A DNA stretch of 64,000 nt from Dimorphilus gyrociliatus (lineage: Eukaryota; Animalia; Annelida): assembly GCA_904063045.1 (NCBI GenBank), contig CAJFCJ010000002.1, forward strand, positions 2,351,891-2,415,890, read 5' to 3'. Numbering within the stretch: position 1 is the first letter of the stretch; every line of letters starts with the position of its first letter. Both the position numbers and the translations under genes were made by a program. This document shows positions 22,319 to 31,138 of the stretch, one piece after another. The notes under the pieces are model-generated. The model saw only the letters and a list, made by a program, of their open reading frames with translations, made no database searches and had not been told where the DNA came from.

Positions 22319-23461
22319 ATTAATATGTCAATATTCTAAAATAGTTTGTTTAATACACATTGCAGATCTGAAGGAAAACGTCACAAAGATAGGTGAGCAT
22401 TTAATTGGAAAACATAGCTGTATATCTATTAATAATAATAAAAAAGACGAATTAATAAAATAAACCAAACCTTTGCTTTTTTTGACATTCTAAAACAAAG
22501 CAAACAGCAAAATAAATAAATAAAAAAACTTTTAAAGCTTCTATAACAAGTTATACTTTAATTTTTTTTCCTATCTTCTTCTATTTTGTTTAATATTTTG
22601 TTAATAAAGAATTATTCCAAATATCTAAGCATCAATCTATCTTTAGTTAACGTGTTTTTTCTCTAAAAAGTATGATTTTTTTTTTAAAAAAAAAAATTTA
22701 ACTATAATATTTATTTAATATCGTAACAAATGCACTATTATTTAGTTTCAGGAATAACGGCTATAGCCTACTAAATATGTCGCAATTTTTATAAGAAACA
22801 AAACTAAAACACAAAAACAAAGCACGTTATTGTTTATATATATACCACAAAAAAAAACACTTTTTAATGATGTTGACTATTGACTATTAAGAAAATTGTT
22901 GAATCAAATTTGCAGATTTTACAAGTTATCTTTGGATTCTACTGATTTGTAAGTCTCTCTTTATCTTTCCAAACTTTTGAAAAGTAAAGTTTTGTAATAG
23001 AGATAATAAATGAAGCTTTCTGTTTATTTGTTTTCTTCCAATTCTCTTCTTTTGCATGTTCTCTTTTATTATTATTATTAAAACACGAATAATTTATTTA
23101 AATAGAGCATTAAAATAATGTTATTCTTCCTTCTTTTCGGTTTATTAGTTATCTTTATCGCTTTCATTGCAATCCCTAAATTAGGACAGTTTAACGGCAC
23201 ATTTTTAGGATATTGCATAGAATTAGTTATTTTTGGAACAGTTTAATGATAATCCTAGTTGAAAAATATGTATTTAAATGGAAAACATTGTTCTAACTAG
23301 TCTTATGACTAATTTGACAAAAAAACCTCATCGTTATCGTATTACGTCACATGTTCGTACAAACAAAACCCAATGTACGAAAATAAAGTAAGTCACATGA
23401 GATATATTTTTGGAGAGTTTATAAATTGATGATAAAGAGAATTGGTACTTTAAACAAGTTA

Positions 23462-26400
23462 ATGTCACGAAAGATGAATCCATTCTGTGATAATCAAGTA
23501 TGGCGAAATATGTCAAAAAGAATATGGAATAATGAAAAAAATAAGGAGGAATGGGATGATAAATTTCGGAAGGATGTTCAAGTAAAGACCTTCCAAATTA
23601 AAATTACTCATATTTTTATTTTTTCTTTTCTTCTCCTAGTCGTTAATAAGTTTCATAGAGAAAACGAATAAAAGAGATTCCGGTTCATTTTGGACAAAAT
23701 TAACGCTCCGTTTAACTAGATTGAAGATGGATATCATTTATAATATAATGAAATCAGAGAAAAGATTGAACGCTTGCGGTGGTACTGGATTTCTAACGAT
23801 TGTAAATCATTTAAATTTTACTGCAAATTCATTTTTTAGGTATTTAATTATTATTATTATACTGCAAAATATTCAAGGTTAATAATAGAAGCTTGGTTTT
23901 ATTTTTTTTTTTGCAGGAGTGGTAAATGCTTCAAAGTAATTCTCCGACACGCAAATTTTAAGGAACAGGACGATGCTAGCCTGGACACTCGTGTTGCTTG
24001 TCTTCGTCTAGACGATGAAGAAGGACAACGTCTAGATCTAATCTTAACAACAGGAAGAGCACCTCTATTCTGGAATGCATTAGATCTGGAAAAACTATTA
24101 AAATCAGTTGAAAATGATGAACATTCAATGAAAAGGTGGCTCTTTGAAAGACCTTTAAAGTAGGCATTGCTTCAATAATGCTGTCTTTCGTTCATACTCC
24201 TTTCGTTAACAGTTTATTTAATACATTGGAAAGCGTAAGAGGTGATATGAACTCATATTTTGATCAACAATACTTCAGCAATTGCTTATATGAAGTTGAA
24301 AGCGATTTTGGGGAATATACACCTTGCGCTTTAAGGTTGATACCTGCTGACGGAACGCAACAATCCGGTCTTCCATCGGAACTGGATCAAATGAATATTA
24401 CGTATAAATACTCTTGTTATATTATAAAATATTTTATATATTAGTAATAATCTTTATATTTATTCAATAAAAACTATCAAGTAATGTAAAAAGGAGACCT
24501 GGAGATAATAGAAAAAAAGACTATCTATGCCAAGAATACAATAGTAGCTTAGATGTTTCCCCTCTTCAATATAGGTTACAAATGCTGTTACTAAATAAAG
24601 TAGAGGAATATATTGAAATAGGTTCGTATAAACTCTTGTTTAACTAGTTTTCTATAAATGTTACATTCTAATTTCAATAGTTGGACTTAAGAAGGTCGAA
24701 AAGACTCGAACTTGGCAAGATTTAGCTATAATTACAATATGCTTTCCAATTTGTAATAATAGCCTTTACGATTTGAAATTTAACTTGGAAAATCATCCAG
24801 AATCGTTTAGGAGACTAGAGGTTAACGACGAAGATGATTTCAATTCACATTCATTCATTTTTCCCGAATTCTTGGGAACAATATCTAAGCCTATTAAAAA
24901 GTAAGAACTAAGAACATCTTATAAAAAGATAATCTTTCAAGATTTATTCATTAAATAGAATTGGTATGAATGAGACAAAAAAGCAAATTTTATCTAAATA
25001 TTCAATATCATTTGAAACTGGTGATTTTCCGGAAGCTGCAACAAATTCCGATGTTTATATATCTTTAACTGGTTAAATATTTTTGAATAATGATCAATCA
25101 AAAGTGATTATAGACAAATCTATTATTAATTCAAACAGGTAAAAGAAAGAAAAGTAACAGATTTTTACTAGAAAATTCAATATTTGAGAATTTTGAATCG
25201 GGAAAAGCTCGTAAATTTTCAATTGAACTCGAAGAAATTGACGATCTTCTTGCAATTGATATTGAATTATGTAAAAATGTCGGAAGTAGAAATTGGTTTT
25301 TGAATAGAGTGATAGTCACAGATGAAAACGGTGAAAATTCAATATTTCCCTGCTTTAGATGGCTTATTCCAGGAGATAATGGTATAACCCTAAGAAACGA
25401 GAGAGGTATTCACAAAAAAAAAGCGTTTTAGATTAATAAGATAACACATTCAAGTGTTATTCTTTTTCTATAGAATGTTTACCTCAATACGAAACAAGCG
25501 TATTCTGTTATCTAAAGAGAAAAGAAGAGTTGGAAAAGACAAGATTACAATTTACATGGCGAAAACAAAATTCATTGCCATCAAGCTTAAATATTTCAAG
25601 GTTTTAATAATTTTACATACTAAAGCATTGTTAATTTATTAAATTAATTAATTAGATACGAAAATCTACCAAGAAATTCAAGATTTCTTAACGATGAATT
25701 ATCACTTAATAAAGAATTTAAAGAATTTCTCTCCAAAACTGATACTTTCGGTCTTAATTCAATAATTAATATATTCGACAGTTGGAATCCACTTACAGAT
25801 TCACTTAAGCTAGCTTCAAGGATTGTTAAAAACAAGTAGATAAAATATAAATCCTCCTGATCTTAGTATCAAAAGGATTAAACATTTAATTTAAGTACTA
25901 TTAAATAATTCCTAAATTAGGGACTTATTGAAAGATTTATGCGAAAAATCTGATTCGGATGAAGAATTTATTCGTCAACTTACATCAGGCCCTTTTTCGA
26001 CTAGAATTCGTGGAATAGATAAACTGCCAAGTTATATAGAAGGTGGAAAGAAAATGTACGAACTTATTGAAAGAAAATTGGACATTTCTGAAGCTTTAAA
26101 AGTAGTTTATGATTCTATTAAATTGAATATTTTAATAGAATTAAATTTTTTGTTTTAGAGAGGCTACATATTCCTAATAAATTATCCAGAAATCGACGGA
26201 CTAATTCGATTAGGTAACACAGAAGTAGAGCCAACCTGTCTTATTCACCTAACAGAAAATGGTAAACTTATGCCATTGGCTATACAAATAAACAAAGTAA
26301 ACCTTTCCTTTTTATTTAATGCCTTTAAGTGATTAATTTATTGCTTAATAATTAGAATTCAAAGACAATCTACACTCCCCTAGATAAACCTGTTGCATGG

Positions 26401-27399
26401 AAATTCGCAAAGTTATTGTTAAAGAGTATTGATATTACATTTTATCATTTAATAACTATGGAACTGTATACAAGGAATGTCCTAGAAATATTTGCGGTTG
26501 GTTTATATCGTCAATTGCCATGTATTCATCCTGTTTATCAAATTCTGCAACCGTTTATTAAGCATATATTTGCCTATAACTTACAAATTTTTGAAACTGT
26601 TCACGAAAGCGACATTTACAATGAAATACTTGTTATTAAAAGAAGAGAGAGGGAAATTTTTCTGAGAAAGGCCTACAATTGCTTTGACCTTTCTAAATTG
26701 CATGTTCCTAAAGATCTTAGTAAGAGGGGTCTTGATATGATTGATGAACAGTTATGGGATAATACATTTGCCGAATTATCTTTGGAATTTTGGAAAGTTT
26801 TACAGAAATATGTCAAATCTCTAATAAGCTCGTATTACAGATCTTCGGAAGATATTCAAGGGGATGAGGAATTACAATCGTGGATTGATGACGTCTTACG
26901 AAATGGATTTTCAAAAGTTTCTAGCCATCAAATGCATAATATACCTTCTAGCTTAAAGACAAAAGAGGAACTAATCGACCTAGTAACGCTTATCATTTAT
27001 ACGTCAACTTTCCGTTTAGCATCTTTAACAAACTCGATTACGGAACTAAACGGTTGCGTTGATATGAATCCAGTCAAATTAAAAGTTGAAGAATCTTTCC
27101 TCAAAGATCTTCACGAACGTTCAGGACTGAAAAAGTTCCTACCTAACAGGGAAAATACCGCTAAACACTTGGCCATGTGTAAATTATTATCAACATCTTT
27201 CACAATGATTAATAATAGGGAAGCGTTTAGCTCAGAATTGAAATATCAAGAAAAATTAAAACAACAAGCATTTTCAACGCTTCAAATGAATATTCTAAAT
27301 GTTCTTAAAAGATTCGATGAAGATAAAATAAAAGAATTCGCCGATCCACTAATCATATGCGAAATCTTCTCTATTCACACTTCAAAGAAAACTTTATAA
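23462..27399 (+). CDS. Catalase-like allene oxide synthase - PLAT - lipoxygenase fusion protein; catalytic residues apparently lost
   Basis: About 11 in-phase exons. AOS-like LRHANFKEQDDASLDTR, DYLCQEY..LQYRLQ, WQDLA, FNLENHPES, DFNS. PLAT TGDFPEAATNSDVYISLTG..WFLNRV..FPCFRW. LOX LMPLAIQIN, HPVYQILQP, DEELQSWIDDV. Confidence 0.88.
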
Positions 27400-28223
27400 A
27401 TGTAGAAAAACTCTTGAAGAAGGCAGTAGAAAAATAGTCTAAAATAGATAGATATCTCTATATAACGAATATAATTCAGATGTCACTACTTTTCCCACGA
27501 AATACATGTTGTTTTTTTTTCAAGCTTGAAAATATCCAAAAAAAAAAAATGGACGATTGACTAGGAAAGTAAAATAACAATAATAGGAGAGGAAAAAATC
27601 CTCTTCTTAGCCATTACTATTCAATATTTTAACAATTCATCCAAGTGATTGTTAGAAAAGTATCCGTATGGCTATTATATATAGTTGTATACTTGAACAG
27701 AATCCAGACATAAATAGAAATATCGGTATATTTCAAAATCTACAAAACGCTTTTCAATTACGTTTAAAAGTTTGAATAAGCTTTTTTATTGGCCAACTTT
27801 ACTGTATGTATAAAGCATATTTACTTCCAGATATTTTTCTGTTATATTTCCCTTTTCTTTCTCCTTCTCTCTCTCTCTCTCTCTTAAAAGCTACTTCCTG
27901 TCGTAATCTTTCATTTTTTACAACTTTAATAAAACTGGTCTATATTTATTCAAAGACAATATTGATTTGTAAGTGAAAAAATGAAGTAGGGCTAATTTAA
28001 ACATGTTAAAATTACTTCCTGTGCAAATCAATAATCAACGGATCTATATTGCTTAATATTGTTTGAAATACTTTTCTTCTTATTTGTATATAGCACAGTT
28101 TACCCTCGATTAGTCACTCCTTTTTTATTTTCATTTAAATAACAAAAATATATTAAAAGATGTAGCGATTATAATAAAAAATACTGTAAAAACTACAGGA
28201 AAAGCTTATCTCAATCCTTTTTA

Positions 28224-30660
28224 TCATGGAAAATGTTCGCGTTTTGGGAAAACAACTACGTTAGGAGGGTTCTCACCCTCTAGCCATAACCACTGATCAC
28301 TATCTTCTTTTCTTATGTCCACGCCCTTTCCGTTGTAGTGAGGGGGGTTTGGGGGAATGGGTGGAGGTAATGTTATATTTGGACTTGTTAAATTCCACTT
28401 TGATTTAAGATCTGTTTGAGGCATACCAGTCAAAAAATCTTTTGGAGGTATTGGAGGAGGTTGTGGAGCACCTCTACCAGAGTTTTTAATAATAGGAGTT
28501 GGTGCAGCATCCGGCTGTCGATACTTTTCTTTTTTATTTTTTTTTGGTTTCGGCTTTTTCTCAGGAGCTGCAGCATTCTCAGTAGGAGGAGGAGGAGGAG
28601 GAGGGGGAGGATGTGGATGAGGAGGATCAGGTATGGAATGAGAGGCAATAGGTGGAGGATCAGGAATGCTAGAAGAGGAAGCAGGTGGAGGTTGAGTCCT
28701 TCTGTAAATGTGTGTACATCAGCTACAATAAGCCCTTAAGGAAGATTCATTCTACTTACACTATGACTTTTTCCAAGGTAAGAGCAGGAGGCCCATTCAC
28801 CGATTGTCCATCTACTGTTGAACCATTTTTACTTCCCCAGTTACTTAACAGTACCTGGTTAAAATTTGAATTGTGACTTTGAACATTATCCGTTGTTAAA
28901 TTACTCCTTGGAGGAATTACTGGGGGAATTGATGAAAGATTATCGGTAGCTGAAATCTCTTTAGATATATTGACATAATCAGCCACCACATCTTCAGGTG
29001 GTGGGTTTAATGTAGGGGTTGTAATAATTGATATGGGATTATTCTTTGTATCAGGGGTATCTGTTGGTGGAGGTACAGGTAAAGGTTTATCCTTCTTTGG
29101 ATATTTCTTTTCTTCTTCTTTACTCACTTTCGACATTCGCCTTCGTGATAAGTTTTTATATACAAAGATCATCTTTTAATGATATTTAAAACAAAACACT
29201 TACCTCCAAAAGTAGATGGCAATTCCGATTATTGTAAATAATACAACACTTCCTCCAGCAGTTATACCGAGAACTGTAAATGTTTGGAAGCTATTCGTAT
29301 TCATACTATTCATTATCTAATATCTCTTACCTGCGCCTAATCCCAAAGGATTACTTGAATTTTCTGTTTGTTCTGGTGGAGCTGTTTCAGCCGTTGTATT
29401 TAAATATATAGTAGTAACAACTGCTGTTGATGGTGGTTCTGTCCAGAGGGGATTCTTTCGGTCTGATAGTGAAGTTTAAACATGAACTTTAAACTTGTAT
29501 CTCAATGCATAATTATCAAACGTACTAAATTCACAGACAAAATTGTTTGAAGTATCAGCTATACTCTTTGTGACCCACATTGATATGTTACCATTTGTTA
29601 TTACATTGACCAAACGTTGATCTTTAGGATGATTTGGAGCCCAGAAGAATTTATTTATCACATCTTCTCCTTTTGCGATATCCCATTTCCAAACTGCTTT
29701 TGATAGTCCAATCCATATAGGCTCTCTTGGAATAGGAAGGTTAAAAGTCTCGTTACTTTTCTCGATAAAAGCGTTAGTCCACTCTTGGGAAGTAATTTTT
29801 GCCAACTGCCCATCATTCTTTTCACAATCTTCTATAGCTTCATAATAATTTATTGTTTTATCAATATTCATCTCATAACAGATATCGTTTCTTGTAAAAC
29901 TCGCCTTCACATTTTTTTGACAATCGCTATATCCCTCTGAGCTAATAAAAAATTTCATTTAAAAACTGAACTTGCTATTCAGAATTCCTACTGTTATTCC
30001 TACCTTTTTTTATATTCACACAAGGAACCTATTCGAAAACTACAACTTGTAAGTCTCCACTTTCCCGCTAAATGTTGTAGATGGTCATGAGTTTGGTAAT
30101 ACGGTAATAGAGAGACACAAGATTTTCCAAAACCATCGCTATTCAATCCTTCCCAATTCTTATATGAATTGTCCTCCACTATATAGGGAGAAATATACAA
30201 ATGGACAAATATGTTTTTCATTAAAAGGATAATTTGAAAACTAACCTTTTGTGCCGTCAATCCATTTCCAGTCTACTTGCGCTGCGAAACCTCCCAACCA
30301 CACTTCAGTTCCTTCGGTAACGTTTTCACTAAGAAGCATATGAGTTAGAAAATTGCGCTGTTCTTCATTTTTTACTGCAGCTAAGCGACCGTTTTGACTA
30401 GCGCAATATTCTCTTGCTTTCTCCCATGTAAAGGCAGAAGAGTTTGTATATAGTTTATAACATTTAAATTCGCCAACATTTGGCGTCATTTCCCATTTGG
30501 GATTGCAGTCTGAAAATTTGAATTCAGAATTATTCATCGAAATTTCGAAATTTATTAGATAATACGTTAAAATACCTGTGTCGTTCCAATTTCCCCAACA
30601 AAATACCAATAGGTGAATAAAAATAACAGAAATTTTAACTATTCTTACTTCGTATGACAT
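28224..30660 (-). CDS. Type-I membrane receptor with two C-type lectin domains and a long Pro-rich cytoplasmic tail
   Basis: Signal peptide, CTLD motifs FKCYK..TWEKAREYCASQNGRLA..WLGG and WIGL..FVCE, Thr-rich stalk, TM VLGITAGGSVVLFTIIGIAIYFW, poly-Pro tail ending ..VFPKREHFP*. Confidence 0.85.
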
Positions 30661-31138
30661 ACTTATGGATAATATTTATCCTTATTTATCCTATTTTTGA
30701 ATAGAGACAGCAAAGCTTGATCTCTTTATCTATTATCGGAAGGGTGTCTCCCCTGTCAGCTATTTACAGAGGAATAATTGCATTTTTCTTTAAAAAAGAT
30801 TGCAGGCCTATTCACTAACTCACCTTCTAGAAGAAAAATATTATGTCACGATTTTCGATTCCTGTTGATTTCTGAATAAAGTAGACAAATGTTACGGTTT
30901 GTGGCTAACACCTTTTCAAATTATTTATAAGTTTTCAAGTTTTCTTCTCGTAATATTCTTTAATCAGCATGTAAAAACTGACTTTAAAGGTTTAATGTAC
31001 GACATATTATCCCTACGTTTCACGTTCAAGCATGTTCTGCGAAAAGTGTTAGTATTCGTTAGGCCTTCAATTTAAGGCTCTGCCCCTTTCAGATCGAAGA
31101 AATCTACCTTAAAAAAGAAAACAAGCAAAAAAAGAACT

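What the first reader, a model, noticed from the sequence alone, without database searches (positions are those of the whole stretch)
23462..27399. Intact AOS-lipoxygenase fusion in which both enzymes appear catalytically dead
Seen: all of about 11 exons splice in frame with no stops. Aligned from memory to the coral Plexaura homomalla AOS-8R-LOX: AOS distal His67 (RRATH) is Asn (KRLNA, 23769); Asn137 (VMNTG) is Thr (ILTTG); Arg349 and heme-ligand Tyr353 (DYNSIGELRVAVY) are Phe and Leu (DFNSHSFIFPEFL). In LOX, the iron ligands His757/His762 (NTHLLRTH) are Met/Arg (ITMELYTR, 26458 and 26473); His943/Asn947 (QHAAVN) are Leu/Thr (RLASLT, 27016 and 27028); the C-terminal Ile is replaced by an extended ..SKKTL. 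The PLAT domain looks normal. Inference: a double pseudoenzyme kept under selection, perhaps as a lipid/oxylipin sensor, membrane scaffold or regulator of active paralogues. I know of no description of this.
Basis: partly seen in the sequence, partly recalled or inferred. Interest (0 to 1): 0.88.

Follow-up and report, generated by a model that had tools for sequence, protein, structure and literature searches.

The report
Doubly dead AOS-lipoxygenase fusion, conserved
This small worm expresses and conserves a full-length copy of the coral-type two-enzyme fusion (allene oxide synthase plus lipoxygenase) in which every residue that holds the heme or the iron is gone, and it belongs to an older, undescribed group of such non-enzyme copies, so the protein must do something other than make oxylipins.

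Summary
Window 23462-27399 (+) is an intact 13-exon gene (not about 11) encoding 1053 aa: a catalase-like AOS domain, PLAT and a lipoxygenase (LOX) domain. A public run holds the fully spliced mRNA.

HMMER alignments to coral AOS-LOX structures show:
- LOX iron ligands His/His/His/Asn replaced by Met/Arg/Leu/Thr.
- The C-terminal Ile buried by 7 extra residues.
- AOS Asn137 replaced by Thr, Arg349 by Phe and Tyr353 by Leu.
- No distal His. Which residue replaces His67 depends on the alignment.

It is not a decaying gene. A syntenic orthologue in a related species is 74% identical over 644 codons. Codon-position identity is 0.78/0.89/0.53, dN/dS is about 0.04-0.17, and introns are randomised. 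AlphaFold2 models exon 13 (the C-terminal half of the LOX domain) as LOX fold (pLDDT 89, TM 0.84).

It is not unique. It sits in a supported clade (99/93) of 11 LOX representatives, all without the canonical ligand set. One is from a nemertean; the others are unnamed contigs. Three of these loci are also AOS-PLAT-LOX fusions lacking the heme tyrosine. Amphioxus, Lingula and Nematostella hold further, independently degenerate fusions.

No paper found describes a LOX pseudoenzyme. The function is inferred only. The scan flagged a second ligand-deficient LOX elsewhere in this genome; I did not check it.

The parts
23300..27543 (+). Transcribed region seen as one spliced RNA contig (5' UTR at least 162 nt, 3' UTR about 144 nt ending at an A-run)
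   Evidence: a 3472-nt contig of run X1, k-mer depth 37, 0 mismatches, with all 12 introns removed.
23462..23581 (+). Exon 1 (start codon 23462; alternative in-frame ATG at 23429)
23640..23839 (+). Exon 2, AOS-like domain. This is the region where the distal Thr66/His67 should be (KSEKRLNACGGTG, Asn codon 23769); it holds no His
23917..24159 (+). Exon 3, AOS-like domain core; Asn137 equivalent is Thr (codon 24047-24049, LDLILTTGR)
   Evidence: phmmer against 1u5u, E 1e-9.
24213..24401 (+). Exon 4, AOS-like domain
   Evidence: 41% identity to the L006 relative.
24482..24621 (+). Exon 5, AOS-like domain (the acceptor at 24482 comes from the RNA contig, 12 nt upstream of my first model)
24681..24900 (+). 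Exon 6, end of the AOS-like domain; Arg349 equivalent is Phe (24860-24862) and the heme-ligand Tyr353 equivalent is Leu (24872-24874)
   Evidence: phmmer against 1u5u residues 295-345, E 1e-3, extended without gaps.
24959..25405 (+). Exons 7-8 (24959-25071, 25139-25405), PLAT domain
   Evidence: PF01477, E 2e-7. The orthologue is 73% identical here.
25474..26296 (+). Exons 9-12 (25474-25600, 25656-25835, 25921-26101, 26159-26296), N-terminal half of the LOX catalytic domain
   Evidence: The orthologue is 78% identical here, with NG86 omega 0.08.
26356..27399 (+). Exon 13, C-terminal half of the LOX domain. Iron-ligand positions are Met 26458, Arg 26473, Leu 27016 and Thr 27028. The former C-terminal Ile is at 27373-27375, followed by 7 extra codons and the stop at 27397-27399
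   Evidence: (PF00305, E 7e-29).

Best explanation
The gene encodes a full-length AOS-like, PLAT and LOX-like fusion protein that is made and kept by selection. It can bind neither heme in the catalase manner nor the catalytic non-heme iron, so it is a double pseudoenzyme.

Shown here:
- The 13-exon ORF is intact and the spliced mRNA exists.
- All four LOX side-chain ligands are absent, and the C-terminal carboxylate ligand is displaced by a 7-residue tail.
- The AOS proximal Tyr, its partner Arg, the distal Asn and the distal His are absent.
- The structural core residues of LOX are kept and the fold is predicted confidently.
- The PLAT-LOX half has been under purifying selection since the split from a related species.
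- The gene belongs to an older clade whose members all lack the canonical ligand set and, where the DNA could be read, are also fusions with a dead AOS site.

Inferred:
- The ligand loss began in the clade ancestor. The first His to Arg and the Asn to Thr changes are near-universal in the clade, while the other positions vary freely as if unconstrained.
- The dinophilid lineage then diverged fast, on a stem branch of about 1.9 substitutions per site, before settling under constraint.

Most likely mode of action (inference, about 35%): a non-catalytic lipid or oxylipin-binding or scaffolding protein, brought to membranes by its PLAT domain, in which the two former enzyme domains are kept together because they act as one structural unit. 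An Arg sits at ligand position 1 in 8 of 11 clade members and at position 2 in the two dinophilid sequences. It may fill the empty metal site.
For: - Gene model and expression.
- LOX ligands: (E 4e-30 to coral 8R-LOX).
- AOS residues.
- Domains.
- Fold: (pLDDT 89.3, pTM 0.90, TMq 0.84 to 5-LOX and 8R-LOX).
- Orthologue and synteny.
- Selection: 644 codons, amino-acid identity 0.74, codon-position identity 0.78/0.885/0.53, NG86 omega 0.07, ML omega 0.04, LWL85 omega 0.17; introns no better than shuffled.
- Clade: one split, 99/93; holds with either long branch removed.
- Relatives that are fusions with a dead AOS site: L004: N137T, Y353L; L006: H67P, N137W, R349L, Y353C; L007: R349T, Y353F.
- From established knowledge: the LOX His ligands and the catalase/cAOS proximal Tyr are required for metal and heme binding.
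Against: - No activity, heme or metal measurement exists; 'dead' rests on sequence alone.
- Selection was measured only on residues 410-1053, because the orthologue contig starts in exon 8. Constraint on the AOS half is inferred from its 30-40% identity to distant clade members and from sharing one ORF.
- dS is saturated, so omega values are rough.
- Only one RNA data set was available, and its library type is not on record.
- The taxa of most clade members are unknown.
- The root of the LOX tree is not known, so 'clade' strictly means one side of a supported split.
- The proposed lipid-binding or scaffold role has no direct support.
Confidence: 0.8

Rival explanations
1. It is a neofunctionalised enzyme. 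The LOX and/or AOS fold has been re-tooled for different chemistry or a different cofactor, for example a metal-free isomerase or hydrolase-like activity on lipids, or a metal bound by other residues. On this reading the protein is catalytic but not as a lipoxygenase or allene oxide synthase.
For: Strong purifying selection and a well-preserved fold fit any function, catalysis included. Thr at the Asn position and Arg at the first His position are near-universal in the clade, which could mark a new site rather than decay.
Against: The other ligand positions vary freely among clade members: H/I/Y/S/E/Q/N/A/R at His2 and L/Q/H/T/Y/N at His3. That is the pattern of released constraint, not of a new conserved site. 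The same holds for the AOS heme positions, with L/L/C/F at Tyr353. No new conserved polar cluster was seen among columns invariant in the clade.
Confidence: 0.13
2. It is a recently inactivated gene on its way to becoming a pseudogene. The open frame and the transcript would be leftovers.
For: All catalytic residues of two domains are lost. The stem branch is very long (about 1.9 substitutions per site).
Against: - About 1050 codons stay open in a 30% GC genome.
- All 12 introns are precisely spliced.
- The orthologue has the same intron positions and an intact frame, with omega 0.04-0.17, while introns are randomised.
- The ligand loss is shared with distant clade members, so it is old.
Confidence: 0.03
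3. It is an alignment or gene-model artefact, and the true protein keeps its ligands.
For: The His67 region aligns poorly. My first model mis-placed one acceptor.
Against: The RNA contig fixes the exon structure. The LOX alignment is unambiguous (E 4e-30, conserved flanks). Three independent methods (phmmer, MAFFT, tblastn) agree. There is no His or Tyr within reach of the missing positions.
Confidence: 0.02

Closest known systems
Coral allene oxide synthase-8R-lipoxygenase fusion (Plexaura homomalla; PDB 3DY5, 1U5U, 2FNQ, 3FG1)
   Same: Same three-part architecture in the same order and of nearly the same length (1053 against 1066 aa). It is the best PDB match for both halves. The LOX core residues and fold are kept.
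   Different: Only about 25-30% identical. All iron ligands and the heme Tyr/Arg/Asn/His are replaced, and the C-terminus is extended past the ligand Ile. It lies on the far side of a supported split from every LOX representative that keeps the full ligand set.
Unnamed clade of LOX-like sequences that holds this gene (P0001-P0004, P0009, P0010, P0020, P0032, P0051, and Lineus longissimus XP_064645118.1 = P0050)
   Same: One supported split (99/93). All lack the canonical His-His-His-Asn set, mostly with Arg at His1 and Thr at Asn. L004, L006 and L007 show the same AOS-PLAT-LOX layout with the heme Tyr replaced.
   Different: Identity to the window protein is only 26-34%, except for the 71% orthologue P0001. 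The dinophilid pair has lost further conserved residues (His773, Arg785, the YRDD motif). The Lineus model is LOX-only within the 10 kb read. None of these sequences has been studied or, apart from Lineus, named.
Database-annotated 'AOS-LOX-like' proteins of Branchiostoma, Lingula anatina and Nematostella vectensis (P0006, P0011, P0012, P0007, P0157)
   Same: Full-length fusions in which some iron ligands (LHNT, HHRA, NQYN, RRYN, RHFN) and often AOS residues are also replaced.
   Different: They fall outside the clade, among canonical LOXs, so their degeneration is independent and mostly partial.
Stony-coral AOS-LOX and LOX variants listed by Lohelaid and Samel 2018 (PMC5793058)
   Same: The paper notes single sequences with His1 to Lys plus Asn to Thr (a LOX), or with T66/H67 missing plus Y353 to Leu (an AOS-LOX).
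   Different: In those fusions the other domain keeps its catalytic residues. The authors leave activity open and do not propose a pseudoenzyme class.

Membership tests
AOS-LOX fusion protein family (catalase-related AOS + PLAT + lipoxygenase) | N-terminal catalase-related domain homologous to coral AOS | tested here: met
   Searches (exon 3 against 1u5u, E 1e-9; exon 6, E 1e-3) and the alignment over the whole domain.
AOS-LOX fusion protein family (catalase-related AOS + PLAT + lipoxygenase) | PLAT domain followed by a lipoxygenase catalytic domain in one polypeptide | tested here: met
   (PF01477 E 2e-7; PF00305 E 7e-29). One search shows one mRNA. One search gives the LOX fold at TMq 0.84.
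Catalytically competent lipoxygenase | Iron ligands: three His plus Asn/His/Ser | tested here: not met
   the positions hold Met, Arg, Leu and Thr.
Catalytically competent lipoxygenase | Free carboxylate of the C-terminal Ile as fifth ligand | tested here: not met
   the Ile aligned with the canonical terminus (Ile1046) is followed by HTSKKTL. The orthologue has 9 extra residues.
Catalase-related allene oxide synthase / hydroperoxide lyase | Proximal heme ligand Tyr353 with Arg349 | tested here: not met
   gapless extension: the positions hold Leu and Phe, and there is no Tyr in the stretch.
Catalase-related allene oxide synthase / hydroperoxide lyase | Distal His67 (with Thr66) and Asn137 | tested here: not met
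   Asn137 is Thr; there is no His in the region, and the exact counterpart of His67 is ambiguous (gap, Arg or Asn).
Pseudoenzyme (homologue of an enzyme lacking catalytic residues, maintained by selection) | Fold retained, catalytic residues lost, gene expressed and under purifying selection | tested here: met
   Selection was measured on the PLAT-LOX half only.
Pseudoenzyme (homologue of an enzyme lacking catalytic residues, maintained by selection) | Demonstrated lack of the ancestral activity | not testable with these tools
   This needs recombinant protein, heme and Fe content, and PUFA or hydroperoxide assays.
Processed or unitary pseudogene | Frame disruptions, no expression, dN/dS near 1 | tested here: not met

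The most novel reading that the evidence does not exclude
The clade holding this gene is an ancient, conserved family of non-catalytic AOS-PLAT-LOX proteins, present at least in annelids and nemerteans. They would act as lipid or oxylipin receptors, carriers or membrane scaffolds, with both former enzyme domains kept because they work as one unit. That would make it the first lipoxygenase-fold pseudoenzyme family, and a case of two fused enzymes dying together yet being retained for several hundred million years.
Probability: 0.35. Interest if true: 0.75.

Novelty: new variant of a known kind. Interest (0 to 1): 0.62.

Why it matters
Lipoxygenases and the coral AOS-LOX fusion are textbook oxylipin enzymes, and I found no paper describing a non-catalytic member. 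Here a whole fusion has lost both cofactor sites yet is expressed, strongly conserved, and shared by a clade that reaches beyond annelids.

- It gives oxylipin biology a natural 'ligand-less' LOX and catalase fold on which to ask what these folds do besides catalysis: lipid binding, membrane docking, or partner regulation.
- Many database entries named 'allene oxide synthase-lipoxygenase' in invertebrates (amphioxus, Lingula, Nematostella and this clade) should not be read as evidence of AOS-LOX chemistry.
- It offers a clean case for studying how fused enzymes turn into pseudoenzymes together.

Tried and rejected
- The search for homologous proteins gave nothing useful. Exon 13 alone found only P0001. 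The clade profile A2 was swamped by vertebrate 5-LOX candidates. A neighbouring TatD-like ORF of L006, tried as a way to name the organism, hit only unnamed ENA proteins. The taxa of most clade members therefore stay unknown.
- A mixed alignment of full-length fusions and short exon pieces (A1) scattered the fragments, so I did not use it.
- Exon 2 alone finds no PDB match.
- The ESM Atlas look-up only repeated 'lipoxygenase'.
- The locus of P0002/P0151 could not be read because the sample file is too large.
So there was no whole-protein Pfam scan, no model of the AOS-like domain or of the full fusion, and no full-length database search; everything was done exon by exon or in scripts.
- The orthologue's AOS half was not recovered, because contig L001 starts in exon 8.
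- No paralogue lies in this window. The rest of the genome could not be searched for an active LOX.
- Yang-Nielsen dN/dS failed on saturation.
Full report
**Gene model and expression**

Reading the three forward frames and pairing GT/AG sites gave a 13-exon model from the ATG at 23462 to the stop at 27397-27399. One public run (X1, 2017, kept as assembled contigs) holds 74% of the sampled words of the stretch, about the exonic share. Laid on the window, it gives a single 3472-nt contig covering 23300-27543 with no mismatches. All 12 introns are removed at GT..AG sites.

Eleven junctions matched my model. The twelfth moves the exon 5 acceptor to 24482 and adds four in-frame residues.

The final exons are 23462-23581, 23640-23839, 23917-24159, 24213-24401, 24482-24621, 24681-24900, 24959-25071, 25139-25405, 25474-25600, 25656-25835, 25921-26101, 26159-26296 and 26356-27399. 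The product is 1053 aa. An in-frame ATG at 23429 could add 11 residues.

The window is 30% GC and the introns are 53-85 nt. An earlier follow-up note of this scan names the genome as the annelid Dimorphilus gyrociliatus. I did not verify that, but it fits the compact structure.

**What the protein is**

Pfam finds Lipoxygenase (E 7e-29) in exon 13 and PLAT (E 2e-7) in exon 8. Against PDB sequences, the best matches of exon 13 are the coral 8R-LOX and the full AOS-LOX fusion (2fnq, 3fg1, 3dy5; E about 4e-30). Exon 3 matches coral AOS 1u5u residues 94-161 (E 1e-9), and exon 6 matches residues 295-345 (E 1e-3). The architecture is therefore that of the coral fusion.

**The catalytic residues**

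| Site (coral numbering) | Coral motif or residue | This gene | Source |
|---|---|---|---|
| LOX His1, His2 | nthllrth | itmelytr: Met, Arg | |
| LOX His3, Asn | qhaavn | rlaslt: Leu, Thr | |
| LOX C-terminal Ile | free terminus | Ile1046 followed by HTSKKTL | |
| AOS Asn137 | ldivmntg | ldlilttg: Thr | |
| AOS Arg349, Tyr353 | Arg, Tyr | Phe, Leu (gapless continuation); no Tyr nearby | |
| AOS His67 | His | gap, Arg or Asn, depending on alignment; no His in reach | |

The flanks of the LOX ligand motifs are well conserved, so that alignment is not in doubt.

The His67 region aligns poorly:
- MAFFT against full-length fusions opens a 3-residue gap at the His.
- A gapless register from the downstream GxxG/TIV motif gives Arg.

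**Is the fold kept?**

Residues nearly invariant in 27 canonical LOX rows are retained, while every ligand position is changed. The retained residues are Trp721, Ala724, Lys725, Glu750, Arg758, His764-Pro765, Trp852, Tyr867 and Asp876/Glu878/Gln880. AlphaFold2 on exon 13 with that alignment gives pLDDT 89.3 and pTM 0.90. Foldseek returns 5-LOX, 8R-LOX and 11R-LOX at probability 1.0, with TM up to 0.84 by the query.

**Is it under selection?**

A search of 1.8 billion representatives found one close relative, P0001, 71% identical. It is encoded on a 7.6-kb genomic contig from another sequencing project, L001. That contig starts in exon 8 and carries exons 8-13 with the same intron positions and an intact frame. 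Its downstream genes are collinear with the window, so it is an orthologue in a related species.

Over 644 aligned codons:
- Amino-acid identity is 0.74.
- Identity by codon position is 0.78, 0.885 and 0.53.
- dN is 0.15-0.17 and dS is saturated (0.9 to over 2).
- Omega is 0.07 (NG86), 0.04 (ML) and 0.17 (LWL85).

The five introns in between align no better than shuffled sequence. The orthologue has Met/Arg/Gln/Thr at the ligand positions and also an extended C-terminus. So the dead state is old and conserved, and a recent pseudogene is excluded. The AOS half of the orthologue was not available.

**It is part of a clade**

Among the 150 best representatives, the top-scoring hits are enriched for sequences lacking the canonical ligand set. 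Trees of the exon-13 region place the window gene and P0001 with nine other representatives on one side of a split. Support is SH-aLRT 99 in the quick tree and ultrafast bootstrap/SH-aLRT 99/93 in the careful tree. The split survives removing either long branch.

All eleven lack His-His-His-Asn. Their ligand patterns are MRLT, -RQT, RHHT, RITT, VYYT, RSNT, REHS, RQ--, RNHT, HALT and RHNT. Arg at the first His and Thr at the Asn are near-universal, and the other positions vary freely.

One member is Lineus longissimus XP_064645118.1, a nemertean. The rest are unnamed ORFs on large eukaryotic contigs in ENA.

Where the DNA could be fetched, the upstream exons encode AOS-like and PLAT parts with dead heme sites:

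| Locus | AOS-site changes |
|---|---|
| L004 | Asn137 to Thr, Tyr353 to Leu (as in the window) |
| L006 | His67 to Pro, Asn137 to Trp, Arg349 to Leu, Tyr353 to Cys |
| L007 | Arg349 to Thr, Tyr353 to Phe |

The AOS-like exons of the window are still 30-41% identical to these distant relatives. That is indirect evidence that the AOS-like fold has also been conserved after losing its heme residues.

Canonical spiralian AOS-LOX fusions exist as well, for example in Tubulanus (P0023, HHHN, with the AOS His, Arg and Tyr present). Outside the clade, fusions of Branchiostoma (LHNT, HHRA, NQYN), Lingula (RRYN) and Nematostella (RHFN) have lost some ligands independently.

**Literature**

No paper in the searchable library links lipoxygenase or AOS-LOX with the pseudoenzyme concept. 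Lohelaid and Samel 2018 (PMC5793058) list single stony-coral sequences with altered ligands in one domain and leave their activity open.

**Interpretation**

The supported reading is a double pseudoenzyme. The protein is full-length, expressed and selectively maintained, and it lacks both cofactor sites. It belongs to an older clade with the same property.

How it works is inference. The retained PLAT domain and LOX helical core suggest membrane association and lipid binding or scaffolding. An Arg at ligand position 1 (position 2 in the dinophilid pair) may fill the empty metal site.

A re-tooled enzyme with new chemistry cannot be excluded, but the free variation at most former ligand positions argues against a new conserved site.

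The scan has flagged a second LOX with a missing ligand elsewhere in this genome. I could not read it, so whether the worm has any active LOX for this protein to regulate is unknown.

**Limits**
- There are no biochemical data.
- Selection was measured on 61% of the protein.
- dS is saturated.
- There is one RNA data set, of unrecorded library type.
- The taxa of most clade members are unknown.
- The tree is unrooted.
- The spliced protein could not be handed to the structure or family tools as a whole.

Noticed in passing
window 23296-23461: The 5' UTR seen in the RNA contig holds short upstream ORFs (ATG at 23306 ending at 23391, and ATG at 23398). An in-frame ATG at 23429 would extend the protein by 11 residues.
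   Followed up: partly
P0006, P0011, P0012/P0047 (Branchiostoma), P0007 (Lingula anatina), P0005/P0157 (Nematostella vectensis): Database proteins named 'allene oxide synthase-lipoxygenase(-like)' that have independently lost some iron ligands (LHNT, HHRA, NQYN, RRYN, RHFN) and often AOS residues. The amphioxus ones are at least 90% conserved between species.
   Followed up: partly
L001:3400-6200 against window 28278-31066: Gene order downstream of the fusion gene is collinear between the window and the related species' contig, while introns are randomised.
   Followed up: partly
L008:5096-5545: A reverse-transcriptase (RVT_1) ORF lies upstream of the LOX exon of a clade member, probably a retroelement inside an intron of that gene.
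   Followed up: no
L006:18370-21042: An 890-aa single-exon TatD-DNase-domain ORF lies next to a clade member. Its only relatives in 5.8 billion proteins are unnamed ENA sequences, so these contigs come from organisms without annotated close relatives.
   Followed up: partly
window 27866-27890: A short (CT)n microsatellite lies about 470 nt downstream of the stop codon.
   Followed up: no
This bears on whether the animal has any active LOX.
   Followed up: no
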